In this document: piece by piece, positions 27,431 to 51,500 of the stretch
Position numbering within the stretch: the first letter of the stretch is position 1
Layout of the letters: every line of letters begins with the position of its first letter
NCBI GenBank assembly: GCA_044892525.1
Contig: CM097886.1
Location: 184,934,312 to 184,998,311 of the forward strand
Length of the DNA: 64,000 nt
Origin: Schmidtea polychroa
Lineage: Eukaryota
Direction: 5' to 3'
The notes under the pieces: model-generated
Told to the model about the DNA's origin: nothing
What the model saw: only the letters and a program-made list of their open reading frames with translations
Database searches by the model: none
Translations under genes and position numbers: made by a program

Positions 27431-28515
27431 CTGTATTACTATGTTCAAGTCTGGACTTCGTGACGGCCATGTAATCGTTGATATATTACTTGATTTCAGA
27501 TAATTTTGGACAATCCGTGCTTTGTGTACTGTGCAATTGTCTTGCTGGAAGTAAAAATTTCCTCTTTAGGTTAACTTTCATTATTGGCACAGCAAAGGTC
27601 TTCAACAGGGTAATGTAATCGGTCGACTTAAATTTGCCAGTTATCATGTGGAAAGATAGAAGTCCGTTAGGAAGGATCATCAGCCAGACCATAATTCACC
27701 CTCCATGACATTGCCGAATATTACGCACATATTTTGATGTTTTCGGAATATATGTCATCCAACAATCTGGTCCATCAAGTGTGAACCTTTTTTCGTCTGA
27801 GAATATAGTATTCTCCCAAATGTGATTGGTCGAAATCCATTCTGTTATCACTTTCATTCTTTCTTCCTTGTGTTTCTTAGATAGGATGATTTCGTGATAA
27901 CTTTTTGCGTATTTCATACCAGCAAGCTGCATATACCTTTGTACTGTCCTTGTTGATACAGCTAGCCCACAATTTCTCTTGATCTTGGGCGAATTAACTT
28001 TATCCGTGCAGTTTCTCTTTTGATGGATAACGCGTCTGCTTTACTTATTTTTCTTCTGTTTCCACGTTTGCGTTTATGTAACACATATTTGTAGGTGACT
28101 AAATTCTTAACAGCATATCTAGACATGCCCAAAATGGTGCCAATTGCACCATAACTGTTACCTTCCTGTTTCATCTTTATAGCAACTTTCTTTAAATCTG
28201 GAGATCTCATAATCAATTCTAAAATTATTATAAACATTAAAATCATATAAAGTAGTATAAAAAAATAGGTTAAAATTATTAATACTTAAAAATCTTTAAA
28301 GTGTGCTAAAAATTGTGTCGTATTTTAATTTTTAAAAAACCTAAGAATTCAAATATTATTTAAACAAAAAATAATATATGTCTAAGTAGTGATAATTATT
28401 AAAAGTATTACTATATTAATTACAATCATACAAAATTTATTTCATTTATTACATTATTAATGATTTTGTAACGAAATTTCTTACTGTGCTAAAAATAGTG
28501 TCGGGCAGTATATAT
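27431..28515 (-). mobile_element. Tc1/Tc3-like (DD34E-type) transposon, frameshifted and 3'-truncated
   Basis: HTH N-terminus (27962-28246), FSDEKRFTLDGPD, QQDNCTVH and WPSRSPDLN motifs in shifting frames; it ends where the third catalytic residue should be. One TIR end at about 28510 with inner and outer direct repeats TGTGCTAAAAAT.GTGTCG (28302, 28485). Confidence 0.88.
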
Positions 28516-28595
28516 AATTCTTTACGGATATCAACAAAGAATTTCATCATGATTTTATAGGTAGTCTCGTGAATACCAACAGTTTTCATTCCTAA
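28514..28595 (-). pseudogene. Actin pseudogene remnant (copy A), split by the Tc1 element; continues about 27340-27430
   Basis: Near-identical to 32133-32215 of the actin pseudogene; joins exactly across the Tc1 insertion. Confidence 0.75.
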
Positions 28596-28598
28596 TAG

Positions 28599-29031
28599 TT
28601 TCTAGGTTTATTGCTATAGGTTCCGTAATAAATGGCGTTACGTAATAATTGATTGCGCAATCATCGGATATATAAGTAGGATGGGAAACATCATATTTGT
28701 ATAGATCAGAATGAGAATCACAAATATAATCCAATCAACCAATGGAATCATCAGCAACATTTCCATGCCATCCAATCAAACATTAATCATAAAATCCAAC
28801 CCAACTGCATTCCTCGAATGGATATTCGGAGATTGGGGGGTCGAAGAAACGGGGAAATCATTTCTAAGTGTAGTGAAACAATTTTTCGTTGAAAGTAAGT
28901 AAATGATTTATTTAATGGGAATATTATTTATAAATTATAATTTTATAGTTGGAACATTGGGAATCTTTATCATCATCCTTGTTGTAATCTTCATATTCAG
29001 ATCGAAAATTGTCAGCATGATCAAGCGTTGA
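28599..29031 (+). pseudogene. 5'-truncated copy 1 of the small membrane glycoprotein gene
   Basis: Near-identical to 32920-33352 but lacks the first codons of the signal peptide and is fused to the actin remnant. Confidence 0.65.
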
Positions 29032-31989
29032 TCTGAGTTATAATTTTATCATCTTAATTGATCAGTTTAATAAATTTGCTTTCATTTCTTTTCATCTTTA
29101 TTTCATCTTTATTATATTTTAAGCATTCTTTACCATTTCCGTTATTACAACTTGTTACGTCATGAGAGTAATTAACCAATAGGAAATGATTGCTTGATTC
29201 AAACAAATGGGAATATTGTTAAGTTATTTTCTAAAAATCATTTTTCACTTTTTTAAATGTTGCCAATAGAGCAGGAGGTAACAAAACAAAAAACTTGATG
29301 ATATAATCGACGAATTAGCAGTAAAAATGTTTGTACAAAAAAAGAATAAAAATTATTATCTTTATGTATGTAAATTAATGAATATATTGGTGAAATAAAT
29401 ATTTCATTAAATAAATTGATAAAATTATGTTTGTTAAAGAATATTAGTTTTTTTTGAATTAAATGACTTTTCGGATTTTTTTTGAAAATTATTTTGTGAT
29501 TCTGTTTGTTTAAATTTCTGATTTCAGATTTATGAAAAGTTGTGTAAAATTTAAAAATAAATGAATTTGCAAATTTATAAGTTAAATTTATTTAAATATC
29601 TTCAATTCCATATTAATTACTCATATTTTTGTAAAATGGATGGTTATGCTTATATTCAAGATAACGTTAGTTTAAATAATAAATTTCAAGATTACTAGAC
29701 AGAGATTATGAATCTCCATTCTAAAAAATTATGGCATCAGATTAGTGTTGATTTGAAAAACCTTTATGATCAACTTATTTCATCATTTGAAAATAAAATG
29801 AATTTCGTCCCAATCCGGTTGAGACTAAAGACGAAACAATGTTCATGTATAATTTCTTATTTTTTGGTAACGGGCCCCGCATATAATATTTTCCCGAGGC
29901 TCTGTAAAACCCACAGCCGATCCTGAATTTACCTTTTATTGAAAATGTTATGTAATTTAATTTAAATTCTAATTTATCGTAATTATTTGAATGCCTAATC
30001 AAATATAAAAAGAATTTTTAATATATTTTTAAAAATGTATTAATATATAAATAACTAGTACATTTTACCGACATAACGTTCGTATTCTCGGCATCATAAT
30101 TATCCACCACGACATTATTTGGTGCTACTGGACCATTATTATTTTCTGGGACATCCGCAATAAAATGTGGGAGGGGGCATTGTTTGAAATATCCAAATCA
30201 ACATTATTGTTATTTCCTAAAATGTATTTTTAATTTTTATTAATTAAAATATAAATAATTTATCATTTTGGAAGATATTTTAGAATATATTGTTTAAATC
30301 CAGCAAATCCTCATTTTCGGTAATCTCTTACCAACCACCAATATTATTATCTAAATGATTATGAATAAATTGTACTATTGATAGTAACAATAAATTACTA
30401 GATATATTAACTTTTTGAATCTTAATGAATATTAATGACTGATTCATAGTCAAGTTTTTTTAATAATACAATGTCAATTGAAAATAAATCAGTGGTGAAA
30501 ACTGAAAAGACTTCTTATAAATATAAAAATAAAAGTAAAAGTCTTTCATTTTCTTCTAATACAACGGATTTTTGAATATTATTACATTTCTATTTGTGAA
30601 TTTTAAAAATTGAAAAATAATTGTGATGAAAAATGTGATTGCAAATGTTTATAAATAAAGAGAAATAAGTTTTTCATAATCAACCAATCCCTATTGAGAG
30701 CACACATGTTTTGCACACTTAATTATATCAATTCATATGAGTTGATGAGAGATATTTATTGAGTATGTGCGCATGTTCTTTGTTAATCATGTATATGTTC
30801 CTAGATAATAATACACTGGTATTGACGAATCCTTGTTACTCATGCAATGGTCGTGTATTTTTTATGTAATTAATATTAATAATAGAAATTAAAATTAAAT
30901 GATAAAATAAACAAAACAATAAAACTAAAAATAACACATTAATTTCAAAAATTTATTAAACATGAAGTTGTTTGAATAATGACCATTTAGCATGTTCCAG
31001 TCAATGGATTTTGAAAGATTGTTTTATTTTACAGAATAAATTTCCAAAATGTTGCAGTTTCGAAACCAATAAAGAGGGATTATAGAAACTCATAGAATCA
31101 AACACATGTATTTTGCTCGGTGTCGTATATAATCCAATCAAATTTTCGTCGCCTCGATGAGATGAATGCGTAAGGAGTAAGATTCATTTTATTAATATGT
31201 TTACATAACTATGATAAAAGATAATAGCATAAACTGTTTCTAAGTAATATAGAACGATAAGTACAAAAGAATAAATGCTTCATAACAAAATGAATAAAAA
31301 CAATTAAAAAATTTAAAAATATTAGAAATTAAAAAAATTTAATAAAATTTAAAAATTTAAAAAAAAGTAAAATTTGGATGGAAGGGGCCCTTAGCTTTTT
31401 TATATAGAGAGAGATAATAATAATAATAATATTAAATAAAAAAATAAAGATTCGATAGTGCCGACTAAATTTGATATAAACAAATTAATGTTTAAACTCA
31501 TTTCTTGACAACTTTTATGTTTTCTTTTTCATTTAATCGTTTTTAGTATCAAAATTTTCTTTAATTTAGCAAATCTTGAAAATCTTTTCATTTGGTTCCA
31601 GAAGTTCTTGATTGAGAAGTCTATTCCGGTGAAAGGGGGGATACGTTATATATTTCAGGACATAAAAAACAAACAAGATGATTTCTGCAACTCCTCCAGT
31701 TGTCAATGAGAGTACTTGAAATAAACCAAAATTTATGAGTTTCATTTCACTGGAAATAATTTCTGGAATGAAAATTCGTATTTTGTTTTAAATTTAAAAA
31801 AATACATTTGAAAATTCTACTTTCGAAAAAATAAAAATTTTCTATTTTATTATTAGTTAAAGTATGTTTTTTCACATTACTTATTTATCGGTTGTAAGTA
31901 GTTGTTTTTGTCATTTTCCATAATGATTAAGATGAGAAAAAATATAATATCTATATTAATAATCCATCAGTGCAAAGAATTCCTCTGAA

Positions 31990-32365
31990 AGAGTTCTTCC
32001 ATGGATCGAAAGCTGCTGAGACTTAGGATAAAGGTGAGAATTTAATTTTCATTGAAGCTTGAACCCAAGTTGATATCTCTTTATGCATACTATCAGCCAC
32101 ATCAGGATACTTTGTAGAAACACTTGATAAAAAATTCTTTACGGATATCCACAAAGCATTTCATCATGATTTTATAGGTAGTCTCGTGAGTACCAACAGT
32201 TTCCATTCCCAAGAATGATTGCTGGAACAAAGCTCCAAGATATCTGAATCTTTCATTTCCAAAGGTAATGACTTGAAAATTTGGCAGTTCATAACTGTTT
32301 TTAAGCGTTGATAAAGAGGCAGCCATTTGCATTTCTTGTTCAAAATCAAGAGCAATGTAATAATG
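31990..32365 (-). pseudogene. Actin pseudogene fragment (copy B)
   Basis: [53 protein letters not shown]...HETTYK.MMKC.VDIRK and ADSMHKEIS...SMKIK align to recalled actin residues about 218-330, with frameshifts and deletions. Confidence 0.92.
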
Positions 32366-32609
32366 ATCAAATTCACTTGATAAAGGCAGTGCCGAAAATT
32401 AGTGAGTATCAACAAACATCGATATATTAATGATTTATAGTCTTCAAGCTCTCTTTTCAATAAATGCTTTTAAAATAAATGAAAGTAAAAAGTAAAAACA
32501 GCAATTCTTTAAATTTTATTCTCGAATTTGGTAAAGATTAAGTGGCTTTTAAAGAAAATGAAAATAATGCGAAATGTAGGATTGATAATCTCATGCAGTT
32601 TCATCTTCT

Positions 32610-32860
32610 ATCCACTTTATCCGACTTCATATCCACCCTTATATCTACACACTTCTTACCTTATATCTGACATTATATCCACACACTTCTGACCTCATAT
32701 TTAACCTTCTATCCACCTTTATATCCACACATCTGACCTTATACCTTATCTTTTATCCATCCTTAAATCCATAGTGTGAACACCTAACTTATATCCACAC
32801 TTATACCCACCTTTATGTCAGACCTTATATCATATCTTATATCTATCTTTATATCCTTTT
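32610..32860. repeat. CCTTATATCCACAC-type minisatellite upstream of gene copy 2
   Basis: Degenerate tandem units; reverse complement of the array at 36170-36885. Confidence 0.85.
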
Positions 32861-32903
32861 TTTCAATTTTTATGGTTTATAATTTTACACATTCAATTTC
32901 AAA

Positions 32904-33352
32904 ATGCATCGAGAGAAAATTTCTATGTTTATTGTTATAGGTTCCGTAATAAATGGCGTTACGTAATAATTGATTGCGCAATCACCGGATATATAAGCAG
33001 GATGGGAAACATCATATTTGTATAGATCAGAATGAGAATCACAAATATAATCCAATCAACCAATGGAATCATCAGCAACATTTCCATGCCATCCAATCAA
33101 ACATTAATCATAAAATCCAACCCAAATGCATTCCTCGAATGGATATTCGGAGATTGGGGGGTCGAAGAAACGGGGAAATCATTTCTAAGTGTAGTGAAAC
33201 AATTTTTCGTTGAAAGTAAGTAAATAATTTATTTAATGGGAATATTATTTATAAATTATAATTTTATAGTTGGAACATTGGGAATCTTTATCATCATCCT
33301 TGTTGTAATCTTCATATTCAGATCGAAAATTGTCAGCATGATCAAGCGTTGA
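32904..33352 (+). CDS. Predicted 108-aa type I membrane glycoprotein, copy 2; join(32904..32962,33031..33215,33270..33352)
   Basis: Two GT-AG introns (68 and 54 nt) remove all in-frame stops. The product has a signal-peptide-like N-terminus, NIS and NQT sequons, a hydrophobic helix IGTLGIFIIILVVIFIF and a basic tail RSKIVSMIKR. Intron 2 has a textbook GTAAGT donor; intron 1 is inferred from frame restoration. Confidence 0.6.
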
Positions 33353-34320
33353 TCTGAGTTATAATTTTATCATCTTAATTGATCAGTTTAATAAATTTGC
33401 TTTCATTTCTTTTCATCTTTATTATATTTTAAGTATTTTTTACCATTTCCGTTATTACAACTTGTTACCTCATGAGAGTAATTAACCAATAGGAAATGAT
33501 TGCTTGATTCAAACAAATGGGAATATTGTTAAGTTATTTTCTAAAAATCATTTTTCACTTTTTTAAATGTTGTCAATAGAGCAGGAGGTAACAAAACAAA
33601 AAAACTTGATGATATAATCGACGACTTAGCAGTAAAAAATGTTTGTACAAAAAAAGAATAAAGATTATTATCTTTATGTATGTAAATTAAATTAACATAA
33701 CTAACAGCCAGATACCAACTACCAAGTACCAACAATCTGTTACCAACTAGGTACTACAACTATCATGTACTGACAATCATCTACTAAGTACCACCGACCA
33801 AGTATTTTCAACTAGCAACTAACAACTTATTGATTCTTATTGATTTTCGCCAACACTTTATTTACTGCAACAATATTTTCATTTGTTATATGAACTATGA
33901 AACTTGAATATTGCGACTTGATCAATTTGACTGTATTTGAGAATTTATATGGAATTTCATGTACCAAGAAATTTATCTTATGTTTATGATACATTTGGTT
34001 TCACATCTATCTTGATTTGAATAATTTTCAATTATTTTCTTAATTGTTTTTTTTCAATACAATAAATCTAAGAATAAAATAAATCCTTTTTATTAAATTT
34101 TATTTTTAAATTTTATCAATCATTAATTAATATTTTAAAAATTGATATTAATAATTTTATTTCATTTTCATTATTATTAATATTATTATTATTAGTGTCA
34201 CTCATCGTGAAATAATCAAAATATATAGGTTAAGTTTCGAATTTAATAATTCACATATAAATAAATAAATTATGTCAAGAACCCTTCACAAAAGATAATT
34301 TAAATAACTAAAAACATTAA

Positions 34321-34366
<46 letters not shown>

Positions 34367-35663
34367 TCAGTATTGACTGAAATTGTGTACATTATATAAA
34401 TTATTAATTAGATTTAATAAAATCACAACATAATATTTTCTACTTTACTACTCACCTTTTAAAATATATTTAAAACAAGTATGTTTTAATTACAAAAATA
34501 ATTATCAATTAATCGAGTAAGGGGTATGATATTATTTAGAATCAATAAGTACCACAGTGTAATAGATGTACATATGTTAATACATATTACAATAAACCCA
34601 CTCACGAACGTATACATATATTAAAACACGGATGTATTAACATTATTTCATACACACGCTCAAATAAATATTATTCAATACATACAAATCATAGAGGCTA
34701 AACACATATCAACCAATCAAAATCATGCAATCAAGTACCCTTACGAAGAGTACCCATAAAGGGCAAAATATATATGTATATATATATATATATATTCAAC
34801 TTTTAAAAATTACAAATTATTCATGTCATATATAATAAAACGAATTAACAATTACTCCATCAAATTTATTATTAAATTCCTTTTAAATTAAATACATCAA
34901 GATAAGAACTTTGATAAAATTATTTTAAGGTGGCAATTGGAGAATTAATCTTTAAACAATGAAATAAATGAACTTTGATGAAATTATTCTGAGGTGGTAA
35001 GAATCATAATTATTGAAAATCTTACAAGTAGTGGCACCTTGAATTCAGTCAATCCGTTGCATTTTTATGATTTTTTTTCATTCAATGATTATCATTTTCT
35101 TCAATGAAGAAGAATTTTCTTTAAAAGATCAATCTATTTGTTAACACCTGGTTATAAGTGCTTAGTACTTGGTAGTTGTTAGTTGCTAGTTGAAAATACT
35201 TGGTCGATGATTGAATTTAGGTTGGTACTTAGTAGATGGTTGTCAGTATATGATAGTTGTAGTACCTAGTTGGTAACAGATTGTTGGTACTTGGTAGTTG
35301 GTATCTGGCTGTTAGTTATGTTAATTTAATTTACATACATAAAGATAATAATCTTTATTCTTTTTTTGTACAAACATTTTTTACTGCTAAGTCGTCGATT
35401 ATATCATCAAGTTTTTTTGTTTTGTTACCTCCTGCTCTATTGACAACATTTAAAAAAGTGAAAAATGATTTTTAGAAAATAACTTAACAATATTCCCATT
35501 TGTTTGAATCAAGCAATCATTTCCTATTGGTTAATTACTCTCATGACGTAACAAGTTGTAATAACGGAAATGGTAAAAAATACTTAAAATATAATAAAGA
35601 TGAAAAGAAATGAAAGCAAATTTATTAAACTGATCAATTAAGATGATAAAATTATAACTCAGA

Positions 35664-36112
35664 TCAACGCTTGATCATGCTGACAATTTTCGATCTGAAT
35701 ATGAAGATTACAACAAGGATGATGATAAAGATTCCCAATGTTCCAACTATAAAATTATAATTTATAAATAATATTCCCATTAAATAAATTATTTACTTAC
35801 TTTCAACGAAAAATTGTTTCACTACACTTAGAAATGATTTCCCCGTTTCTTCGACCCCCCAATCTCCGAATATCCATTCGAGGAATGCATTTGGGTTGGA
35901 TTTTATGGTTAATGTTTGATTGGATGGCATGGAAATGTTGCTGATGATTCCATTGGTTGATTGGATTATATTTGTGATTCTCATTCTGATCTATACAAAT
36001 ATGATGTTTCCCATCCTGCTTATATATCCGGTGATTGTGCAATCAATTATTACGTAACGCCATTTATTACGGAACCTATAACAATAAACATAGAAATTTT
36101 CTCTCGATGCAT
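35664..36112 (-). CDS. Predicted 108-aa type I membrane glycoprotein, copy 3 (inverted copy)
   Basis: Same 449-bp span and splice sites as copy 2; one visible amino-acid change (TLIIKS to TLTIKS). Confidence 0.6.
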
Positions 36113-36169: not shown

Positions 36170-36885
36170 TTGATACAAGGTCTGATATAAGGTGGGTATA
36201 AGGGTTGATAGAAGGGCGGGTGTGGATGTGTGGATATAAAGACGTGTATAAGGATGGATATAAGGTAGGATATAAGGGTGATATAAGGGTTGATATAAGG
36301 TGTAATATAAGGTCAAATGTGGGGATATAAGGATGGATATAAGGACGGGTATAAGGGTGGATATAAGGGTTGATAGAAAGGCGGGTATAATTGTGGATGT
36401 GTGGATATAAAGGCGGGTATAAGGGTGGATATAAGGAGTAATTTAAGGTTAGATGTGGGGATATAGGGGTGGATATAAGGTTTAATATAATGTCAACTGT
36501 GGGGATATAAGGATGGATATAAGGACGGGTATAAGGGTGGATATAAGGGTTGATAGAAAGGCGGGTATAATTGTGGATGTGTGGATATAAAGGCGGGTAT
36601 AAGGGTGGATATAAGGAGTAATTTAAGGTTAGATGTGGGGATATAGGGGTGGATATGAGGTAGGATATAAGGGTGATATAAGGGTTGATATAAGGTTTAA
36701 TATAATGTCAAATGTGGGGATATAAGGATGGATATAAGGACGGGTGTAATAAGGTGTAATATAAGGATATATAAGGTGTAATATAAGGTCAGCTGTGGGG
36801 ATATAAGGATGGATAAAAGGACAGGTATAAGGGTGGATATAAGGAATAGTATAAGGTCAGATGTGGGGATATATTGGTGGATATA
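36170..36885. repeat. GGATATAAGG(GT) minisatellite upstream of gene copy 3, with a 180-bp higher-order duplication
   Basis: Lines starting at 36361 and 36541 are identical (period 180). Confidence 0.9.
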
Positions 36886-37469
36886 ATTTTTTATGAGACG
36901 ATCTATGAGAGCATGATGAAGAAATTGAGAAATAATTATTATCTTTCTCGGGATGAAGAATTCTTACAGAAAGAACAATGTTGTAGCAAAAGATTAACAC
37001 GAAAATACGTTATTTACCTTATAATACAGGCGGAATAAATTAATAAATTTTTGTGAATAGGTCAATAGCTCACCGCAATATTTTTCTATATTCAATTTCA
37101 AAACATTCAAAATAACCTCAATAAAAGAAAAGAGTCAATCTAAGAAAAATTGGCTAGAAGACCCATGATCATGTTTTGAGTAGAATTGTAGTGACAATTG
37201 AAAGGTGGTGCAGAATTATACAAGGTCTATGGTAGAGAACTATGTCAAATCGTTTTAGTCCACTCAACATATTTTCAAGAAAATCGGATATCTATGAAAC
37301 ACAAATAATAACTAATTGACTATTTTGGTAGAAATATTCGAATATAGACTGATTTCTTTGATATTCATATTATCTAAATTAATTTTTAGAACGGAAGTTT
37401 GTTTTAATGTGTTAATTAAAATTTCAAAAATTTTGTATTGTATTATTTATAAAATGAAATGTGGTCCAC

Positions 37470-38143: not shown

Positions 38144-38850
38144 TAGGGTGGAGTGAAAAGTGAGGAAAAAAATCATTTTGAGAGTTTTTACTTGGAATAG
38201 CAATGAAAAGACGTGGAGTGTTGTCATCTAAAAGATATTAAAAGTTCAACTTGATAAGTTGATATCTTAGGCTCCCCCACGAGCGATGAAAATGACAATA
38301 TTTGAACATTTTTTACCGAAAATGTTTAATTATAATATACTGAAAAATAGTGATACAATTTGCTTCTATATTATCAGAAACATTTTTAGGCAGTTTTGGC
38401 ACAGTTTTAACATATATTGTCTCAATAAAAACACACACATTCAAATGAGTCGATATGACTGTCACATATTGAAGTCCCGTTTTGTGTCAAAAACGGGTAT
38501 TTTTGAGCTAGACTCCAGTCTTGTACGGATAAAACCGTCTCGTCGTGTCTCACCACACACAGACTGAGATGCCTCACTCACCACCTTGATGCACCTCTCC
38601 ACAGTCTGCGTGTAGCATGGGTATCTGTTGAATTTGACCACGGGCGTAGTTGGTTCACGTATGAACTGTCGGAGGTCATCGTTACTGATACTCATTGTGA
38701 CTGGTGGCTCGGTCACATTCACTGTCGACCAGTCAATCATTTCGGTGTAGTCTGTGCAGTCAAAGTTAATCGACGGCACTGTGAACTGCCGAACGCCCTT
38801 CCTCTTCGGCTGGTCTCGTGCTTTCAGAATTCTACGGAGGGCTATGCAAG
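38144..38850 (-). mobile_element. 3' fragment of a DNA transposon, probably hAT superfamily (hATm-like)
   Basis: ORF 38462-38866 has FTVPSINF...TEPP...YPCYTQTVERCIKVVSEAS...RDGFIR, a recalled transposase C-terminal signature. Terminus TAGGGTG at 38144. The other end is absent; subgroup assignment is from memory. Confidence 0.7.
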
Positions 38851-41800
38851 TGCTGCAGTTTATCAAATTTACAATCCTTCAGTAACTCTCTTATACTATA
38901 TTTAAAATTAATGATATTTAGATTTATTCTACATAATTTTAATTTATGGACTTACTCTAAGATGTAATATAACTGGCTTAGTTAAAAATAATAATAAATA
39001 TTTTCCCCTAAATATTTTAGTGCGCACTCTAAATTGTTTTGTAAATATTGCACAATTAAGATGAATTGGATAAAAGGCCTTGCGTTAAACTTTACAAAAA
39101 TGGCCTAACTTCAGTCGAGCGTAGTTTGTCCTGGTAAAAATTAATTAAGAATTACCAGCGATCTACTGTAAGTCAAAACCGTTTTTAATTCTTGGCTATT
39201 TTCTCTAATGAAAGCAAGGTAGCAAATTTCGGGAATCTTGATGTCATTAAGAATTTGCAATGAAAAAGTCTATAAAAATTATTTAAACTTTTTGTTCTTT
39301 TGGGCCCCTTGCAAGCCTATAACGGGGCATAAACTTCCAGATAGCAAGTATCATGATTTTGTTATTTTATTTATTTTATTACAAATCAGGTTGGTCTCAA
39401 TAAGGTATAGGTATTGAGAGGAGTGACAAACTCAGAGGCTGCACTTCCCCCCCCCCCATTTAATAAATATATTTATTATATAAAATTAAAATTTATTAAA
39501 TATTTATTGTAAATATTACCTCAATTAAAATGTTAATTATTTCATTGGGGAATCTGTAGAAGGAAATTTATATATTTATTAAAATTAATAAATATTTATT
39601 AATTGTATAAATATTTACATTGAGTCTCAAATTGATGTTGATTGAGTTGGAATGAGAGGAAATGGAGCTGGAAATATCTCCAGGAGAACAGTTCCGTGAT
39701 GGCAATGAAATCATTTTTCAAGAATAAATAATCCAATTAATTAAAACAAATTCAATCGTTTGTTTTATTGGATAGATTTGGCCGCCTTTCGGGAGGCTAG
39801 CTAGGTGAAATGAGAAATATTTTCTTTCAAGTAAAAAACTCATAAATTTACAATTTTTCATTGAATATTTTTTTATTATATTTGTAAGAAAGTTTTGTCG
39901 GTTTATTATTTAAATAAAAGAACTTTAAACAATCACTAAACTCTTTCTGGCGTCTTGGAGGGGGATTCTTGATTCAAGTAGCTTCTCCAAATGCTTATCA
40001 GAAAGAACACCATCAAGTTTAATTAGTAAAAGTAAGACCTTCTTAGTCAATGTCAAAGAGCTTCCATCGAACATGTCCATATGGATGTTACAATTCCACC
40101 TATAAGGATAAAAAAATAAAAACATACATTCTGATTGCAATTTATATTTTCCATAATTAATTATTCTTTTAAATACCCATCAAACAATAAAAAATATTTA
40201 AATAGAAATATTAAGCGATATCTGATATATCTAAAACGGTAAAAGGTGGTATTTTGTCTTCCAAATAAATATATGGAACTTTTTTTTCTCGAAAAAAAGT
40301 ATTTTTTTGACAGTCTAGGATTTTGATGAGATACCGTTACAATTCTGCCTGGGGTAATTTTCTGTAAGACTTAAGAAACATAAACATATTTTTATGATAA
40401 GTGTCTAGATATTGAAGAATNNNNNNNNNNNNNNNNNNNNNNNNNNNNNNNNNNNNNNNNNNNNNNNNNNNNNNNNNNNNNNNNNNNNNNNNNNNNNNNN
40501 NNNNNNNNNNNNNNNNNNNNNNNNNNNNNNNNNNNNNNNNNNNNNNNNNNNNNNNNNNNNNNNNNNNNNNNNNNNNNNNNNNNNNNNNNNNNNNNNNNNN
40601 NNNNNNNNNNNNNNNNNNNNNNNNNNNNNNNNNNNNNNNNNNNNNNNNNNNNNNNNNNNNNNNNNNNNNNNNNNNNNNNNNNNNNNNNNNNNACAATTGT
40701 ATATTTTGTGTTCCCATTCGTGAACTAACTATATAATCATTGATTTTTATCAAAGAAAGTAGCTGTTTATCAGTTGATCCGATCAACCCGTGTGAATGTT
40801 GATGATCTGAGAATCTCGAAATGGAATTCATGCGTAATCTAATCAAGAATGTCTAACATTATTGATTCAACAGAAAAAACTCCGAAAAAATTGGCTCCCC
40901 AAATACGACTTATTAATTAAGATGTACTAGAAAAGTCGCATCTGGCTAATTTTGAATGGCAGACCCAGCGTGACGGTTTTCGAAGCCAATTCGTTGAAGT
41001 GTTTTTAATTAAATCGATTCTTTTGCCGAGGATTTCCCAGTGAAAACAGAATTTTGAGATTTAATCAAATGTTTTTCTGCGATTTAAATATTGCCAAAAA
41101 CATATTATAGGCGAACATAGGCAAGCATTTGCTAAATAGTTTGCATAAATCAGGCTTACTCTAAAAAATTTCAAATTATTTTCGTTATGTCACAAGAAAT
41201 ACTTTAAAATAATGGCATTCGTTTTACAATATATATCTTTAATGGGAAGAAATTACAAGGGTTATTAGGGTTGTCAAGGTTGATGGCTGTAATAATAGTG
41301 ACGACTAGAAATGACTTGATAGCAAAATTGTCTGTTTATATATGGTAAATTTTAGGGAAATGGTTGATAGAGCTAGAAAAATAAAGATTGAGAATAGAAT
41401 TGAAAGTGTTTGCTATTTGATAAACCATACTGTAGGTTAACATACATTTATAATCCCTATAGAAATTGATGTCGCCAGTCAATTCTTTATCATATTTATT
41501 GTTGACAAATGGACCCAACAACTTCTTTGTCAATTAAAGTCCTCTGTAATTTAAGGGAATCACAATTTGTCGGATATTTCATTCCCACAGTCAATTGTAA
41601 AACCGAAAGAAGATAGGTGAAAGACACTTAATGATAAGAATATCAAAATTTGACATTTTAAAAATGTTAAATTAAATCAAAGAAATATTTTAGTCAAATA
41701 TTTTATATTCTTTTCGCCTGTAATTTGTTTTTGTTTCCTTTATTTTTATTTATTTTGTGAGAAAATAAAAAAATTGGTTAAAAATAGAAAAAGAAAAGAA

Positions 41801-42589: not shown

Positions 42590-45500
42590 ATGTCAGAAGT
42601 ATTAAATTTTTATTTACAAAAATATGGTTTAATTGAAAAGCAAACGGAAAACATAAAAATTGATGCAAATGAAAAAGCCAAGTAATTTAATGTTGAGTTT
42701 AATTTTCAACACTTAAATCAAACTAGAGAAAGATGGAATTTATTGCGTAAAAGTATTTGTAGTGTTTCGGATATTATTGAAAAACAAGATTTAATCGACA
42801 TAAAATTATCTCATGGAATCGAGTTTGTGAGGAGAATAAATCACATAAATCCGATTGAACAAGTGCGATTTTGAATAAATATGTATATGAGATTATATAT
42901 CAACTAATACAGGCGGATTTTATTCCTTCTATTGACTCATATCTAACTCTTGATGGCTGTTCAGTGAGGCAATTCGATTCAAATGGTCGGTGTAAAAATT
43001 TCATGCCATATTCAGGCATTCCAGTGAAATTCAAGCGATTGCAATATGCAAATTGTAGTGACAGATATATCGCTTGGACCCCAGATGAAACTGAATTGGC
43101 AATGCTCAATTCATCATTTGATGTAAGCTAAATTCATTTGAGCTCTCTTGCAATATTCTGATAAATTTATCGGTATATATTTCAGGGTGAGTTGCAGCTT
43201 AGAATTGTAATTGGGGGATGTCATTATTTGATATATTTCCAATGGGGGTCACTGCCCCCCCCCCCCCTCTGGGAATCGGGCGCGTTTGGTCATTCATTTC
43301 TCATGCTAGTCATGTGGATATCATTGATAGTGCTCAATTAGGTTTATAATGGGGATTTATTGTGGCTTTATACTTCATTTGCCTTATATTTACCCTTGTA
43401 CCCTATATGGGGGTCACTGCCCCCCCCCTGGGAATCGGGCGCGTTTGGTCATTCATTTCTCATGCTAGTCATGTGGATATCATTGATAATGCTCAATTAG
43501 GTTTATAATGGGGATTTATTGTGGCTTTATACTTCATTTGCCTTATATTTACCCTTGTACCCTATATGGGGGTCACTGCCCCCCCCCTGGGAATCGGGCG
43601 CGTTTGGTCATTCATTTATCATGCTAATCATGTGGATATCATTGATAATGCTCAATTAGGTTTATAATGGGGATTTATTGTGGCTTTATACTTCATTTGC
43701 CTTATATTTACCCTTGTACCCTATATGGGGGTCACTGCCCCCCCCATGGGAATCGGACGCGTTTGGTCATTCATTTCTCATGCTAGTCATATGGATATCA
43801 TTGATAATGCTCAATTAGGTTTATAATGGGGATTTATTGTGGCTTTATACTTCATTTGCCTTATATTTACCCTTGTACCCTATATGGGGGTCACTGCCCC
43901 CCCCCATAGGAATCGGGCGCGTTTGGTCATTCATTTCTCATGCTAGTCATGTGGATATCATTGATAATGCTCAATTAGGTTTATAATGGGGATTTATTGT
44001 GGCTTTATACTTCATTTGCCTTATATTTACCCTTGTACCCTATATGGGGGTCACTGCCCCCCCCATGGGAATCGGACGCGTTTGGTCATTCATTTCTCAT
44101 GCTAGTCATATGGATATCATTGATAATGCTCAATTAGGTTTATATTGGGGATTTATTGTGGCTTTATACTTCATTTGCCTTATATTTACCCTTGTACCCT
44201 ATATGGGGGTCACTGCCCCCCCCCTGGGAATCGGGCGCGTTTGGTCATTCATTTCTCATGCTAGTCATGTGGATATCATTGATAATGCTCAATTAGGTTT
44301 ATAATGGGGATTTATTGTGGCTTTATACTTCATTTGCCTTATATTTACCCTTGTACCCTATATGGGGGTCACTGCCCCCCCCCCTGGGAATCGGGCGCGT
44401 TTGGTCATTCATTTCTCATGCTAGTCATGTGGATATCATTGATAATGCTCAATTAGGTTTATAATGGGGATTTATTGTGGCTTTATACTTCATTTGCCTT
44501 ATATTTACCCTTGTACCCTATATGGGGGTCACTGCCCCCCCCCTGAGAATCGGGCGCGTTTGGTCATTCATTTCTCATGCTAGTCATGTGGATATCATTG
44601 ATAATGCTCAATTAGGTTTATATTGGGCATTTATTGTGGCTTTATACTTATTTGCCTTATATGTAGCCCAGCTCCCAATATAAGACCAAGCCCCCCCCCC
44701 TCAACTTTAGACACGTGTTATTATTCATTCATGTTATCAAGTCATATAGAAACCAAAGATAATAGTGTTATTTGCTTATATTAACAATTTCTATGGCACA
44801 CAAAGCGTGTTTCTCCTCATTTAGCGTTGTTCCCTTTATGGGTGTCACCCTCCCCTCATGGAATTTGTAATGGGTTTTTGTTCAGTTTTGTTGCCAAATA
44901 ATGTGTGAGGTTCATAATGAGAATTTATTGTGGTTTCATACTTCTTTTCCCTTATAATTTTAGATTTTAGCCTTGTTCCCAATATGAGACCAAGCGTCCC
45001 CCCGCAAAAATTAGACACGTTTTTTATTTCATTTATCTTGCTAAATCATATTGATATCATTTATTATGTTTGATTAGGTCTATAATGATGATTTATTGTT
45101 GCTTTATACTTCATTTTCTCTTTATTTACCCTTGTTCCCTTTATGGAAGTCACCGTCCCCTCATGGAATTTGGAATGGGTTTTTCTTCAGTTATGTTGCC
45201 AAAACATGTGATTTATTAATAATCAGGCTTATAATGAGGATTTATTGCGGTTGGATTTAACTTCCCTTATATTTAGCCATGTTCCCAATATGATTACCAA
45301 GGGTCCCCCTCCAGTATAATTTATAATTTATAATTTAACGAACAATCATATGAATAGTATTATTAATAATGTAATAAGATTTGCTTAAAAATTTATTATA
45401 ATTCAAATGATGTCTGTTATATTATATGTTCCTAATATATTTGTGGATGTTATGAACTCGTTATGTTATTATGTATAGAAATATGATGAGCCCGATAGAG

Positions 45501-48500
45501 TCACCGATAAAAAAATTGTGTTGGGACTATCGGGGTGTATGCTATGTCACCACAAATAAAATAATAATAATAATAATAAAACCAGAATATAAAATTAACT
45601 AACAAGTTATTAATTCAACCTTTATTAAAAAGAAATATAAGACCTTAATTATCCTGGTTATAGGACTGTAAACTTAGTTATTTCCTTAGTAATTAGGAAG
45701 GTTGTCCTCGACTATACTCTTGAGTTGTATTTAGAAGCCTGGGGATTCTACTACTAGATCGTTTATTTGTATATTTTAAACTGTCACTTGAATAGTTTGT
45801 TTTCTTTGAAGAATTCTCTTACGATCGACACTTGTATCTTTGATTGTATATTTGATTTTCGTTTACTTGTGTATCTGAAACTAGTACTTGAATAGTCTGT
45901 TTTCTTTGAAGAATTCTTTTATCTTCTTTTAATTAATTTTCTTCGTTAATTACAGTCCTTTGCGATTCTTAAGATTTGAAGTCTTAAATAGCTTTTTAAT
46001 TTCCTATCGATTTTTTTTTCCTTTTACTATAGTAAATTATCGCTATATAGTTTTTTTGAAAATCTGGATTTCCCAGATGGTGACAGTTTATATTTTGGTA
46101 TTCACAATTACTAATTGTGAACACTAAAATACATACAAAAATAACAGTACATTACAATGTCGTTCCTTATAATTTACTGATTTCCCCATATGGTACCAAG
46201 GCCCCCCCCCGCCTGTTCTACAATTTAGCCGAAATTTTTATATTTGAAATCAATTATGGAGCTATATCATGCTAAAGTTTTTAATAAAAAGACATATTAA
46301 GCTCAAAATGGATTCTAGATACCTCATTTTCCTATATATTTTTACTTGTTCCCAATGTGACAGTTTCACCCCCCCCCATTCCCAGTATTAATTTTTTTAT
46401 TCATTTACGTTCCCAAATCATTAGGCTTAGACTGGGATTTATTGTGACACAAAGGTTTATATCTATATAATGCCGGTTACTCAAGTAACGGGTTCACTGT
46501 CACCCCCCCCCCCCTCCCACACCTACCTCCAATATTTTCAAACAAATTTACTGGCCAAATCATGAATTTGAACATTATTATTAATGATAAAAATATATTA
46601 AACAGTGATTTATTGTGGATTTTGCTTGTTGCCATCATGGAGGGCTCATTGACCCTCCCGGAGTATTTGGTGCATATTTCTATATTTTTATTTATCCATG
46701 CAACAATATCATATGAAAGCTTCCCCGATTGTAATAGGTAATAACATTCAGATAGTCGAAGTCATCGACAAAGCACTTATTGAGGGACCCATCAAGGAAC
46801 TGCTGTACAATGAAGACAGAAATGAGATAATCTCATCTCACTGCAATCGGTTGCTAATTTGGCAATTCAGATATGCTAATAAGCATCTCATTCCGCGGTT
46901 GTCTGTAAATATAAACCATAAAGACCAATTTGCTATGATATTCTCTATTGAAAGAACTCAGCGGGAAAACCAGTGCCTATTTCTAGCGAATGACAATGGT
47001 GTGACAGTTGTGGAGCTATCTACAGGTGTGGTCACGGGTAATCATTTATCCCTCCATGACCGACCTATTAGCGCCTTGACATTTTTCAATCCATTGAAAC
47101 TGTTATCAACAGGATGTAGAGATGGATCTATAAAGGTTTGGTCGTTCGCAAACGGTAAAATCCATCTGAAAATGGTATTTGTTGGTCACACGAGTGTTGT
47201 TAGTTGCTTAGCTTTCTTTCCCGGTGGTTCTCAAGCCACTATTGCTTCATGTGGTAGTGATAAAACACTTAGAGTTTGGTCTTTGGAATTGGATGACGAG
47301 GTTGAATGTTTGGATTTGGAATACGCTTCGAAATACATTGGATCAGACATCACAAGGACATCGTTCTTTACTTTGAGTACAACTTTCATTGACATTTGGC
47401 ATCAGAATCATTTGTCCGATGATTTACTCAGCTTGACTTCTCCGGTTTCTAAAATGTCTAATACTGATTCCAATAAATGTCTAGTTCAATGTCGAAACAA
47501 TCTTCTGTTTTATTTAGAATCTTCTCCTAGTTCTCGGATTATTACAAAAACGGTTATCACAAAGTTTGACAGTTCTACTCAAAATCCAAAAGTGCGTTCA
47601 ACGATTCATTTGGAAAATCAAAGCCTCCTTTTGATATTAATACAAGTAGGATTAATATTGTAATTTACTGAGAAGCCCTCAATGATCCTCCCCTAATTTG
47701 ATTGCGCTATTTAATATATAACATACCAAATAATGCGAAACTTGAAAAGAAATTTAACTTAATATTTTACTTATAATTTGTCAGCAACTAATATTGTATA
47801 AAATCTATTATTTCAATTTAATATTATTAATCATTATTAATAATTATTAATCATTAACATTATTAATCATTATTAATCATTAACATTATTAATCATTTCT
47901 AAAATTTGAATTCTACAAATACTTAAAAATATTAGACATTATTTTCTGATAATTTTTACCACGGTGCAACATCATAGCTTCTTTATGCCAGGACGTTTTT
48001 ATTCTACCCTGTAGATTTAGTTATCATTATTGTTTACCGGTAACATGTTATAGAAATTGCCCTTGGGTGCCTCAGTATCTCACATGATTTTTATAAATCG
48101 GGTTTTGTTTGTACCAGTTGGAGCAATAGTTGTTCATGTCTTTTAGTTACTTAAAGTTATTGTTTTACCAGATCATTTAAGCATAACTTTTTAATGCAAT
48201 ATTTGATATTATTTTAAAGGCCTTGAAAAGGTGAATCGAACTACACTATAAAAATTAAAAACTGGAAGGCTGTGCTCAAGAAAAAAGTAGCTCAGTGGAA
48301 TTTTGTACCCTGGTGGATCAGCAGCCTGTTACTAGCAATCGCAGGCTGTCAGAGGAGTTTTGCCATTCTCAAAGCATTAATGTTCGTCTTCTGCAGAACA
48401 TTGGTTTTGTAAATAAAAAATACACGTCGAGTTCCCCACGATCTGACAAATATTCAAACCAGCCTCTTTGTAACGAATTACTCGATAACCCAAAAGACAG

Positions 48501-51500
48501 ATGTTTTTGGAAGCAAATTATTACAGGAGTCAAGATGTGGGTTTTTTCGTAATTCTAGTGACTGTAAGCAGTGGATTCAGCCTAGTCAAAAAAATCAGGA
48601 AGTTTTTATAGGGCGCTACAAAAAGAAACTTATTCGGATCGTCGAGTTATCGATGGTAACATTTATTCTGAACAACTACAGCAAGTTCATGATACTTTGA
48701 GCACTCGCTACCCGGGATTGTTGAATCGCAACAGATCCATCCTACAGCATGATAATTCCCCATTTCATACATTGCAAAGGGTGAAAGAGAAAATTCAGGA
48801 ACTGCAGACCATCGAAATCATCTCCCATACTGATTATCATTTGTTGCGGTCTCTTTCATCCTTTTTGGTTCAGAGGAAGAGGTCAATTTGACAAGGACTA
48901 CCTTATAGTCGAAAATATTTTCATTTTTATCAAATATATTATTCGCAGCAAAATGCTTAAATTATCATTTAATTGTTTATAATGTTTTAATAGATATTGG
49001 AAATTCAATATTTTAATAAAATTATGCTTTTTGAAAGTTATGATATATTTGTAATTTTGTAGCAATAACAAAATAGTACAATAAATGTTTTCCTAGTCTC
49101 CCTCGTTTGGCCATTTATACTTTCATTGTATTCATCTTGCATTATAATTAATAAATACGTGGTTCCCTCAATTAGTACTTAGACTCGACAAGAAATAAGC
49201 AACCGGTTTTTTTCAAACTTTCCCCTAACAATCAAACACCATGTAAAAGTTTATTTCTCAATGTAGAGTCCGTTAACTTCCACGTATTTTCACCATCGTT
49301 ACACCAAGTCCAAAATTCACTTTTCATAGACAGTTTTGAGATATGAAGTCAGTTGGGACTGTAAGATAGATGAGACACCAGTGAAAATACATAGGAGACA
49401 TTTGTTGCTTTTGTCAGTTGGGATGTGGAGATTAGGGCATTATCAAGTCATAGCCAGATTTCATTATTTCCTTTTTTCTGTCGCTTTCTTCTTGCTTTCT
49501 GTACTGATTGTACATTTTTTACTTTTGATTTTGACATATGATGCAACAAATATAGAATATCACAAAACATTGTGATGATCAGACATTTTTTGTGATATGA
49601 GGCAGTTTTCATTTCCAATGACGGTTCTTCCTTTGCATCTTCCATAACGTTTGGTTTCAGTTAGGTATAGGCGCAGATTATGTATTTTAGGAAGGCATCA
49701 CGTAAATTATCTATGAAATTAAATGAAACTTTAGCATTATTAGATGCAATTTTAACACTATTAAATGTAAATGTCATACTAATAAATGGGAAAACTTTTA
49801 TTGTAAATATTTGATATTGATATTTTAAACTCCTTGAAATAATACCTTCCAGATTAGAAATGAATATTTTCCGGGGGGAATCTGGTATTGGCGGATGCCG
49901 AACACTGAGTCGAGTTCAAATATAATAAAAATAAAGTTAATATGGGTCCTAATATAGGACCCGAATGAACAATCTAGTTAAGTAGGGGCAATCGAATTAT
50001 CCGGCGAGGAATTAAATTGGGATAGGCTGTCGAAAAAATAAATGAATTGCCAAAACTAATTAAGTCGACAAGAGGAAGCCCGGAAGAAATTTAGCAAAAG
50101 TAATTTGATGAAGGGATATTATAATTACGAGATGGGTTTAAAAGAAAGAAGAAAGAAGAGTGATATTACAGTCAAAGGAAGTAAAGGCCAATTTAACTTT
50201 AGTGCTAACAAAATCGTTTTGAATCTAGCGTAGAAAGATTTATTCTTGCGTAAGATTGAGGTTGAAATTTGAAAAGTGTGCAGAGTAAAAGGAGTTATTT
50301 AAAGTTGTGTAAATTGAGATTGTTTCATTAAAGTGTGTAATTGTGATAATTTCGAATAAACATTATTGTTTTGGGTTGTTTGATTTGCTTAAAAAAAGAA
50401 CATCAAGGAATAAGACAGTGATACTGACTTGCACAAAATACCCAATAAATCTAATAAGGTGGCAGAGTAAAAGAATCCTTAGACAAAGTAAGAAATGAAT
50501 TTGATTTTGCTGGATTATTAGAAAAATCCGAATTATAAAAATAATTTGTTTTTCACAGTCGGTAAAATCTAATATTGACATAGTCCAAGTAAATGAATTG
50601 ATTGGTCAATTTGAATAAATTATGCATCATTTCATATAGGAAAATCGATTTTCAGATAATATTGATAAAAAAATATAATTTTGTTGATTAAAAATAAAAG
50701 TTGTAGTAAAAAAGCATTAATGAGATAGAAAATGGTTATATGAATGACAGTATTGGTGGGGATTATTATTAGGATTATTGGAAATTTTATATTGCCTTAT
50801 TCTTTTATTTATTAGGATAACGAAATTCTTCATTATACTACCAAGAGTAATCCTATGGTTATTGTGAATCACTCTCAATATGAATCTGACGATTCTTTAG
50901 TACTTCTGACTGTCTATAAACCTTTATCTAGTTTCAACGATAAATCTCCAAACAAGAATCTCATTTTCTCCGGTTCAAAATTAGGATGGGTTAGGGTCCA
51001 TGATATAGCTGATTTGAATAAAACAACCTTTGAAATTGATGCTCATTCGCAATCCGAGGTTGTCTGTATGATACCGGATCCCTTGAACAGTAGACTTTAC
51101 ACTTCGGGAATGGATAACAGTATCAAACTTTGGTATGTTTATCCTTTTGCAGTGGAACCTTTGTCAAAGATTTTATCCTTTTTCTGTGGACTTCTTCCGT
51201 CGAACTTGATTAACATCAATAACTATTTGTTTACTGTTTTCCAAGACCCAGACCGAGCTCATTATCCTTGTGTTGTTTACAATATTGATACTCGTGGCAG
51301 ATACGATCATTCCCCGTCGGATGATCACATCGAACCGGTGAGCTCTATCAGTGCATGTGAACGAATGAAACTTTTCCTCTCGTGTTCAGCCGGAACAGAG
51401 AATGTGATAAAAATATGGACGCATAGAAATGTTCTTTTACGACAAATCGAAATGCATTTCCCCGTCAATTATGCTATTTTCTCCTCGTTTCAAGGTGACA

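What the first reader, a model, noticed from the sequence alone, without database searches (positions are those of the whole stretch)
32904..33352. Hidden three-exon gene for an orphan 108-aa single-pass glycoprotein, present in three copies
Seen: the ORF track shows only a 63-aa fragment. Splicing 32963-33030 and 33216-33269 gives MHREKISMFIVIGSVINGVT-MRITN...NISMPSNQT...NAFLEWIFGDWG...KQFFVE-IGTLGIFIIILVVIFIF-RSKIVSMIKR: signal-like N-terminus, two N-glycosylation sequons, Trp-containing amphipathic juxtamembrane segment, TM helix and basic tail. I do not recognise the family. Inference: a lineage-specific surface microprotein. The aromatic membrane-proximal segment loosely recalls viral envelope or small fusogen stems, which is speculative.
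Basis: partly seen in the sequence, partly recalled or inferred. Interest (0 to 1): 0.7.

Follow-up and report, generated by a model that had tools for sequence, protein, structure and literature searches.

The report
Triplicated orphan membrane microprotein gene
The region holds a real but unannotated small gene, present three times, for an 88-residue protein with one membrane-spanning helix near its end. It has two exons rather than three, and it lacks the secretion signal that made it look like a surface glycoprotein.

Summary
The three copies are real and 92-97% identical at the DNA level: 28599-29378 (+), 32501-33800 (+) and 36387-35223 (-). The 63-aa ORF and the 54-nt intron 33216-33269 are also real.

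An exhaustive protein search found two relatives (46-49% identity) on metagenome contigs of another AT-rich eukaryote. Those contigs show:
- the same start, MRIT;
- a 54-nt phase-1 intron at the same codon;
- the same ending, a 17-residue membrane helix followed by a basic tail.

Two copies there differ by 7 synonymous changes and 1 replacement (omega 0.04). This supports a protein-coding gene under purifying selection.

- a TATATAA box 42-43 nt upstream of the ATG is conserved in all lineages and lies inside "intron 1";
- an in-frame TAG sits 9 nt before the ATG;
- the relatives have no acceptor and no homologous exon 1;
- window copy 1 lacks the exon-1 ATG but keeps the whole gene.

The product is therefore 88 aa with no signal peptide. 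It is most likely tail-anchored with its N-terminus in the cytosol, which is inferred. One conserved N-x-S/T site and the positive-inside rule keep an N-outside topology possible.

There is no Pfam, PDB or viral relative. This is an ordinary orphan microprotein gene that was locally amplified.

The parts
32958..32982 (+). Two bZIP-type palindromes, GTTACGTAAT (PAR/E4BP4-type) and ATTGCGCAAT (C/EBP-type), just upstream of the TATA box.
   Evidence: RTTACGTAAY occurs in the 64-kb window only at the three gene copies, against 0.25 expected. The exact ATTGCGCAAT occurs only at copies 1 and 2, and copy 3 has one mismatch. L001 has ATTACGCAAT at the aligned place. Function is inferred from the known consensus sites and was not tested.
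32990..32996 (+). TATA box (TATATAA) of copy 2, 42 nt upstream of the start codon.
   Evidence: The same heptamer sits at -42 (both window copies scored, 1 and 2), -43 (L001) and -42 (L002), while the surrounding sequence diverges. Its base rate in the window is 5.5e-4 per position.
33032..33215 (+). Exon A coding part of copy 2: start codon (A at -3, G at +4) through residue 61 plus 1 base. It encodes the N/S/T/I-rich N-terminus, the invariant FLEW-x-x-GDW-x-V core and an amphipathic helix.
   Evidence: phmmer against 1.84 billion representatives found P0002 (49% identity, E 7.9e-10) and P0003 (46%, E 1.3e-8), both starting M-K/R-I-T. Exon DNA identity to L001 is 66%, against 51 +/- 2% for shuffles. 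An in-frame TAG lies at 33023-33025.
33216..33269 (+). The only intron of copy 2: 54 nt, phase 1, GTAAGT...TTTTATAG, 11% GC.
   Evidence: L001 and L002 have a 54-nt phase-1 intron (GTGAGT...TTCTAG) at the homologous codon. P0002 reads ...VE-SK... after the homologous position, which is what read-through of A|GTAAG gives.
33270..33352 (+). Exon B coding part of copy 2: a 17-residue membrane helix (residues 62-78), a 10-residue basic tail (+4) and the stop codon.
   Evidence: L001 and L002 encode a homologous helix plus tail (R-T-R-I-V-R-K-I-R-N-A) after the intron. TMD GRAVY is 3.2 in the window and 2.36 in L001.
33390..33395 (+). AATAAA, the likely poly(A) signal, 38 nt after the stop codon.
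   Evidence: Direct reading of the sequence. It is kept in all three copies.
28711..29031 (+). Copy 1 of the gene: exon A 28711-28894, intron 28895-28948, exon B 28949-29031. It is intact with one replacement (N to T in 'NPN'). The TATA box is at 28669.
35664..35984 (-). Copy 3 of the gene, inverted: exon A 35984-35801, intron 35800-35747, exon B 35746-35664. It is intact with one replacement (I to T in 'LII').
32904..32962 (+). It is rejected as coding and is best read as promoter-upstream DNA.
   Evidence: It is not conserved in L001 or L002 (56% identity against 52 +/- 2% for shuffles). It is absent from copy 1. It lies upstream of the conserved TATA box.
32600..32860 (+). Degenerate ~12-nt minisatellite (CTTATATCCACC-like) upstream of copy 2. 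A longer array, 36170-36890, lies upstream of copy 3.
   Evidence: It is part of the duplicated unit and its role is unknown.

Best explanation
This is a real protein-coding gene with two exons, driven by a TATA-box promoter. It has been amplified recently into two direct copies and one inverted copy by local segmental duplication.

Gene layout in copy 2:
- TATA box at 32990
- ATG at 33032
- one 54-nt phase-1 intron, 33216-33269
- stop codon at 33350-33352
- AATAAA at 33390

The product is 88 aa. It has a polar, uncharged N/S/T/I-rich N-terminus and an invariant aromatic core (F-L-E-W-I/L-F/L-G-D-W-G/D-V, predicted helix). An amphipathic helix follows, then a 17-residue membrane helix (62-78) and a 10-residue basic tail.

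Shown here: the exon-intron structure, the start codon, the promoter position, purifying selection on the protein, and restriction of the family to a few sequences.

Inferred:
- There is no signal peptide and the only hydrophobic helix ends 10 residues from the C-terminus. The helix would still be inside the ribosome when translation ends, so the protein is probably inserted after translation as a tail-anchored protein.
- In that case the 61-residue N-terminal part faces the cytosol. The two helices before the anchor would lie on or near the membrane surface, and the invariant Trp-rich core would be the working surface, binding a partner or the lipid interface.
- The strongly basic tail would then favour peroxisomes or the mitochondrial outer membrane over the ER.
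- The paired bZIP-type sites next to a TATA box suggest regulated rather than housekeeping expression.
For: Gene model:
- Relatives P0002 and P0003 were the only credible hits among 1.84e9 representatives.
- The contigs L001 and L002 show the same start, a 54-nt phase-1 intron at the same codon, and a homologous helix plus tail.
- TATATAA sits at -42/-43/-42.
- An in-frame stop lies 9 nt upstream of the ATG, and A-3/G+4 context is kept in all.

Coding:
- L001 against L002 gives 7 synonymous and 1 non-synonymous change, omega 0.04, binomial p = 1.9e-4.
- Exons are 66% identical between the window and L001 and flanks are at background.
- A 4-codon in-frame indel lies in the N-terminal region.
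- All three window copies keep the ORF, splice sites and TATA box.

Topology:
- Only one hydrophobic segment exists, residues 62-78 of 88, with a +4 tail (+5 over the 11-residue tail of L001).
- Costello et al. 2017 (PMC5450235) show that TMD hydrophobicity and tail charge together sort tail-anchored proteins. A highly charged tail directs them to peroxisomes or mitochondria even when the TMD is hydrophobic.
- AlphaFold on exon A gives two helices (31-41 and 45-59), at low confidence.
Against: - No transcript evidence could be obtained. The window's own protein is not in the 15-billion-protein collection.
- The tail-anchored topology is a rule-based inference.
- The positive-inside rule (tail +4/+5, N-flank about neutral) would equally put the tail in the cytosol and the N-terminus outside.
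- One N-x-S/T site is conserved at the same aligned column in all three lineages (NQT, NKT, NES), which hints at a lumenal or extracellular N-terminus.
- Within the window, both differences among copies in the CDS are replacements and none is synonymous.
- The L001/L002 intron is as conserved as the exons (53/54). Part of their similarity therefore reflects recent duplication or gene conversion, although the 7:1 ratio still argues for constraint.
- The function of the conserved core is unknown.
Confidence: 0.55

Rival explanations
1. The same 88-aa two-exon gene, but with the opposite topology. The N-terminal 61 residues are outside the cell or in the lumen and are glycosylated, and the basic tail is cytosolic. 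This is a small surface sialoglycoprotein-like molecule without a cleavable signal, in the manner of glycophorin C.
For: - The positive-inside rule fits: the tail has 4-5 K/R and no acidic residues, and the N-flank is neutral or negative.
- One sequon is conserved at the same column with a variable middle residue.
- The first 30 residues are uncharged and rich in N/S/T, like a glycosylated stalk that can be translocated.
Against: - The helix ends 10 residues before the stop codon, so co-translational targeting is not possible.
- From general knowledge, no established route moves a 61-residue N-terminal domain across a membrane after translation using a C-terminal anchor.
- Sequons arise easily by chance in N/S/T-rich sequence, and the other sequons are not conserved.
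Confidence: 0.22
2. One reading: three exons and 108 aa, with exon 1 (32904-32962) supplying a cleavable signal peptide. This makes a type I surface glycoprotein.
For: - The join is in frame with GT..AG borders.
- The exon-1 peptide has an 11-residue hydrophobic run.
- It would explain how an N/S/T-rich N-terminus with sequons reaches the outside.
- Copies 2 and 3 both keep exon 1.
Against: - The conserved TATA box lies inside 'intron 1' at a fixed distance from ATG 33032 in three lineages.
- The relatives have no AG acceptor before the ATG and no similar upstream exon.
- Copy 1 lacks both exon-1 ATGs yet is otherwise intact.
- 'Intron 1' has 35% GC, like the exons, and a poor pyrimidine tract.
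- A 20-codon ORF with a hydrophobic run is unremarkable in AT-rich DNA.
Confidence: 0.07
3. It is not a functional gene. Either it is a chance ORF inside a non-coding repeat or transposon fragment, or the copies are three decaying pseudogenes.
For: - ORFs of 63 aa are common in this window.
- The copies are embedded among a Tc1-like remnant, an actin pseudogene fragment and minisatellites.
- Among the window copies, exons are not significantly better conserved than flanks.
Against: - Omega is 0.04 between L001 and L002.
- Protein-level conservation with relatives is 46-49%, while the flanks are unalignable.
- Intron position, phase and length are conserved.
- No terminal inverted or long terminal repeats bound the unit.
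- All three copies keep the ORF, splice sites, TATA box and AATAAA.
Confidence: 0.04
4. It is a captured viral envelope-stem or small fusogen gene.
Against: - No relative was found in 2.9 million viral contigs using the family profile.
- There is no PDB match. The best hit is E 0.58, to an unrelated globin.
- There is no Pfam family.
- The gene has a spliceosomal intron and a TATA promoter, and the aromatic core lies 20 residues from the helix rather than next to it.
Confidence: 0.02

Closest known systems
Tail-anchored membrane proteins as a topological class, for example small ones such as Fis1-type adaptors, the ~90-aa BH3-only protein Harakiri, and SERCA-regulating micropeptides
   Same: There is no signal peptide and a single hydrophobic helix lies within about 10 residues of the C-terminus. 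A short basic tail follows, the total size is small, and the helical functional segment lies upstream of the anchor.
   Different: There is no sequence similarity to any of them and no Pfam hit. The BH3 core L-x3-G-D is not met, because here L and G are separated by four residues. The N-terminal third is N/S/T-rich and carries one conserved sequon, which is unusual for a cytosolic domain.
Small signal-less or type I sialoglycoproteins (glycophorin A/C type)
   Same: It has an S/T/N-rich N-terminal region with sequons, one membrane helix, and a basic stop-transfer-like run immediately after it (R-S-K-I-V-S-M-I-K-R).
   Different: The cytoplasmic part is only 10 residues, so co-translational insertion is not possible. 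There is no homology, and glycosylation was not tested.
FXYD family of single-span ion-pump regulators (Pfam PF02038)
   Same: The protein is about 60-100 aa with a single span. It has a conserved aromatic/acidic motif before the helix and a basic tail after it.
   Different: There is no Pfam match at E <= 0.01. The conserved motif here is FLEW..GDW, 20 residues upstream of the helix, and not the juxtamembrane FxYD.
Viral fusion-protein membrane-proximal regions and small fusogens
   Same: It has a Trp-containing amphipathic segment on the N-terminal side of a membrane helix.
   Different: There is no viral or structural relative. The gene has a cellular architecture, and a second helix separates the segment from the anchor.

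Membership tests
Tail-anchored protein (topological class) | No N-terminal signal peptide or other hydrophobic segment | tested here: met
In the 88-aa product, the only Kyte-Doolittle 19-residue windows above 1.6 all overlap the helix at 62-78.
Tail-anchored protein (topological class) | A single transmembrane helix so close to the C-terminus that it leaves the ribosome only after termination (within about 30-40 residues) | tested here: met
   The helix spans 62-78 of 88 with a 10-residue tail in the window. L001 and L002 have the same layout with an 11-residue tail.
Tail-anchored protein (topological class) | Post-translational insertion with the N-terminus in the cytosol | not testable with these tools
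   This needs a protease-protection or glycosylation-tag assay. The conserved sequon and the positive-inside rule argue mildly the other way.
   Exon 1 is absent from the relatives and from copy 1. The conserved TATA box lies downstream of it, and an in-frame stop lies between them.
   One sequon is conserved in column (NQT/NKT/NES) and the others are not. Occupancy cannot be tested here.
Viral envelope or small fusogen protein | Detectable homology to a viral protein or a solved fusion-protein structure | tested here: not met
   The profile scan of viral contigs gave 127 pattern matches, none confirmed. The PDB profile search gave nothing below E 0.58. The AlphaFold model was too poor (pLDDT 53) for a fold search.
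   No credible terminal repeats were found. Omega is 0.04 between L001 and L002.
FXYD (PF02038) | A match to the family profile, with the FxYD motif next to the helix | tested here: not met
   Pfam scans of both exon translations returned no family.
BH3-only tail-anchored proteins | BH3 core: a hydrophobic residue (L), three residues, then G-D | tested here: not met
   In all family members the sequence reads L-E-W-I/L-F/L-G-D. Four residues separate L from G, and the residue at G-4 is E.

The most novel reading that the evidence does not exclude
The family could be a membrane protein anchored near its C-terminus whose 61-residue N-terminal domain is nevertheless outside the cell or in the lumen and glycosylated. 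The conserved N-x-S/T site and the positive-inside rule both point that way. That would require an insertion route not described for proteins whose only helix ends 10 residues from the stop codon. The Trp-rich invariant core would then act on the outer leaflet or on an extracellular partner.
Probability: 0.15. Interest if true: 0.55.

Novelty: new member of a known kind. Interest (0 to 1): 0.3.

Why it matters
The work adds a real, constrained gene family that no annotation or protein database currently holds. Only two unannotated ORF fragments matched among 15 billion proteins.

It also shows how a plausible-looking signal-peptide exon can be refuted by comparing promoters. For the genome concerned, it means three missed genes and a corrected gene model.

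More widely the finding is modest. Lineage-restricted single-pass microproteins are common, and their functions are mostly unknown. The one biologically open point is topology: a C-terminal anchor combined with a conserved sequon. A single bench assay could test it.

Tried and rejected
- A word-indexed protein search with exon A alone found nothing.
- The same search with the family profile found only the same two relatives.
- The JGI metagenome scan returned one locus, L003. It is a GC-rich bacterial contig whose 51-aa ORF shares FLEWIFGD only because that pattern was the search key. It has no membrane helix, so I rejected it as a chance match.
- The three long multi-stretch hits P0001, P0004 and P0005 (793-1814 aa, 7-11 short stretches mostly on the low-complexity N-terminus) were taken as compositional and not pursued.
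- The DNA for P0002 could not be fetched because the sample file is too large.
- Rfam and tRNA scans of the window found nothing.
- AlphaFold on exon A gave pLDDT 53, so no fold search was run.
- dN/dS among the window copies is uninformative, with only 2 changes.
- The organism was not identified. The neighbouring WD-repeat gene is 83% identical to UniParc UPI000602BA8E and 53% identical to a Logan contig of run SRR33002330, and neither carries a name.
- I did not submit the spliced 88-aa sequence to any remote tool, because it has no single reference in the window. The exhaustive exon-A search already shows the collection holds no such product.

Full report
**What is in the sequence.** The window is AT-rich metazoan-type DNA, 17-39% GC in 2-kb windows. 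It also carries:
- a coatomer beta-prime gene;
- a large WD-repeat gene with introns of about 3 kb;
- hAT and Tc1-like remnants.

At the reported site the ORF list shows a 63-aa ORF (33032-33223) and a 38-aa ORF (33236-33352). Three copies exist: 28599-29378 (+), 32501-33800 (+) and 36387-35223 (-). They are 92-97% identical across exons, intron and flanks alike. A relaxed tblastn with all family members found no further copies.

**Is it more than chance?** Not from the window alone.
- Stop-free stretches of at least 63 codons occur 128 times in this window.
- The three copies differ at only 2 CDS columns, both replacements, against 12 non-coding columns (Fisher p = 0.16).

External evidence therefore decides the question.

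**Relatives.** An exhaustive phmmer search with exon A against 1.84 billion cluster representatives found two credible hits. P0002 is 75 aa, 49% identical, E 7.9e-10. P0003 is 74 aa, 46% identical, E 1.3e-8. Both are unnamed ORFs from short ENA metagenome contigs. Each starts M-K/R-I-T, and each stops being similar exactly where the window's exon ends. P0002 continues ...VE-SK..., which is the read-through of an A|GTAAG donor.

Two contigs carry P0003: L001 (26% GC) and L002 (30% GC). After the homologous codon they have a 54-nt phase-1 intron (GTGAGT...TTCTAG). This matches the window's intron 33216-33269 in length and phase. The next exon encodes a 17-residue hydrophobic helix and a basic tail, then a stop.

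**Coding constraint.**
- L001 and L002 differ in the CDS by 7 synonymous changes and 1 replacement. Omega is 0.04, and the probability of at least 7 of 8 being synonymous under neutrality is 1.9e-4.
- Between the window and L001 the exons are 66% identical at the DNA level, against 51 +/- 2% for shuffles. Sequence further than 60 nt upstream and the downstream sequence are at background.
- The only indel in the protein alignment is four codons, in frame.
- One caveat applies. The L001/L002 intron is also 53/54 identical, so part of their likeness is recent duplication or conversion.

**The first exon fails.**
- A TATATAA heptamer lies 42, 43 and 42 nt upstream of the ATG in the window, L001 and L002. 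The DNA around it is otherwise poorly alignable. Its base rate in the window is 5.5e-4 per position. In the window it is at 32990, inside the proposed intron 1.
- An in-frame TAG lies at 33023-33025.
- The ATG has A at -3 and G at +4 in all lineages.
- L001 has no AG closer than 27 nt to the ATG and L002 none closer than 10 nt.
- Window copy 1 begins its homology at 28599. It lacks the exon-1 ATG and reads AGG at the second ATG, yet keeps the TATA box, ORF, splice sites and AATAAA.
- 'Intron 1' has 35% GC, like the exons. The true intron has 11%.

The gene is therefore: TATA 32990, ATG 33032, exon A to 33215, intron 33216-33269, exon B 33270-33352, AATAAA 33390. The product is 88 aa.

**Promoter detail.** Just upstream of the TATA box lie GTTACGTAAT and ATTGCGCAAT. 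From general knowledge these are the consensus palindromes for PAR/E4BP4-type and C/EBP-type bZIP factors. The first occurs in the window only at the three copies, with 0.25 expected. L001 has ATTACGCAAT at the aligned position. Any regulatory role is an inference.

**The protein.**
- Residues 1-30 are N/S/T/I-rich, nearly uncharged and variable.
- Residues 34-44 are the conserved aromatic core F-L-E-W-I/L-F/L-G-D-W-G/D-V, invariant except at three positions.
- Residues 45-59 form an amphipathic helix, with a hydrophobic moment up to 0.63.
- Residues 62-78 are the only hydrophobic helix, GRAVY 3.2 (2.36 in L001).
- The tail has +4 charge (+5 in L001) and no acidic residue.

AlphaFold on the five-sequence exon-A alignment gives helices 31-41 and 45-59, but at pLDDT 53. 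I therefore did not run a fold search. No Pfam family matches and no PDB relative (best E 0.58). The family profile found no relative in viral contigs.

**How it most likely works.** There is no signal peptide, and the helix ends 10 residues before the stop codon. The helix therefore cannot emerge from the ribosome before termination. By the accepted definition the protein is tail-anchored, inserted after translation with the N-terminal 61 residues in the cytosol. This is an inference, at about 0.55.

Under the rules of Costello et al. 2017 (PMC5450235), a highly charged tail directs such proteins to peroxisomes or mitochondria, and a very hydrophobic helix pulls towards the ER. The organelle is therefore open. 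The invariant Trp-rich helix and the amphipathic helix next to the anchor would lie at the membrane surface and form the functional face.

The main rival (about 0.22) is the opposite topology. It is favoured by the positive-inside rule and by one N-x-S/T site kept in the same column in all three lineages (NQT, NKT, NES). I know of no insertion route for that arrangement.

**Origin of the copies.** Copies 1 and 2 belong to a tandem duplication of at least 2.2 kb. The segment 26812-27379 matches 31447-32014 at 98.8%. An actin pseudogene fragment lies next to both copies.

Two differences separate copy 1 from copy 2. A Tc1-like remnant lies between copy 1's upstream segments, and about 700 bp present upstream of copy 2 are missing.

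Copy 3 is an inverted duplicate lying tail to tail with copy 2, 1.35 kb away. No terminal repeats mark the unit as a transposon.

**Verdict.** This is a real, unannotated orphan gene family. The finding is ordinary in kind, a lineage-restricted single-pass microprotein that was locally amplified. It leaves one small open question, the topology.

Noticed in passing
window 32105-32332 (-) and 28509-28601 (-): A degenerate actin fragment, matching actin residues about 227-295 (E 4e-23 to PDB actins), lies just upstream of copy 2. A shorter piece abuts copy 1. It appears to be a pseudogene carried along with the duplicated unit.
   Followed up: partly
window 27486-28246 (-): Frameshifted ORFs here resemble a Tc1/mariner transposase N-terminus by eye. 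No family scan was run on them. The piece lies between the upstream segments of copy 1, and no inverted repeats were detected.
   Followed up: partly
window 36170-36890 and 32600-32860: A degenerate 12-nt minisatellite (GGATATAAGGGT on the + strand at copy 3) lies upstream of gene copies 2 and 3. It is much longer at copy 3 and accounts for the strong GC skew of 36-38 kb.
   Followed up: partly
window 33700-33830 and 35170-35300: A short ACCAAC/TACCAAGT-type low-complexity repeat lies at the 3' end of the duplicated unit in copies 2 and 3. It is absent from copy 1.
   Followed up: no
window 42892-43125, 46731-47675, 50816-53995 (+): A large WD-repeat gene has three exons separated by introns of about 3 kb. 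It is 83% identical to an unnamed 1413-aa UniParc entry (UPI000602BA8E) and 53% identical to a Logan contig of run SRR33002330.
   Followed up: partly
window 59158-63722 (-): Exons of coatomer subunit beta-prime (COPB2). One intron (about 61000-61100) contains a short tandem repeat that the ORF finder translated as [10 protein letters not shown] repeats.
   Followed up: partly
window 14574-15344 (+): A 256-aa ORF carries a hAT C-terminal dimerisation domain. It lies in the most GC-rich 2-kb bin of the window (38.5%) and is probably a transposase remnant.
   Followed up: no
window 8063-8461 (-): An exon-like ORF matches the Suf / HAT-repeat family (a CstF-77-type mRNA 3'-end processing factor).
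   Followed up: no
window 38462-38866 (-): A 134-aa ORF with no Pfam match lies in a relatively GC-rich stretch. It could be part of an unclassified repeat or gene.
   Followed up: no
L001 1-110 (-): A divergently oriented ORF start appears, on reading it by eye, to encode a signal-peptide-like N-terminus (MKCFVLFLTFFLILPVFC...). It lies about 400 nt upstream of the family member and is a neighbouring secreted-protein gene cut by the contig end.
   Followed up: no
L001 696-749 vs L002 397-450: The 54-nt intron differs at 1 site between the two contigs, while synonymous sites differ at 11%. Either the short intron is constrained or the two copies have undergone gene conversion.
   Followed up: no
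L003 2249-2404 (+): A GC-rich bacterial metagenome contig has a 51-aa ORF containing FLEWIFGD. It has no membrane helix, and I judged it a chance match produced by the pattern-based scan.
   Followed up: yes
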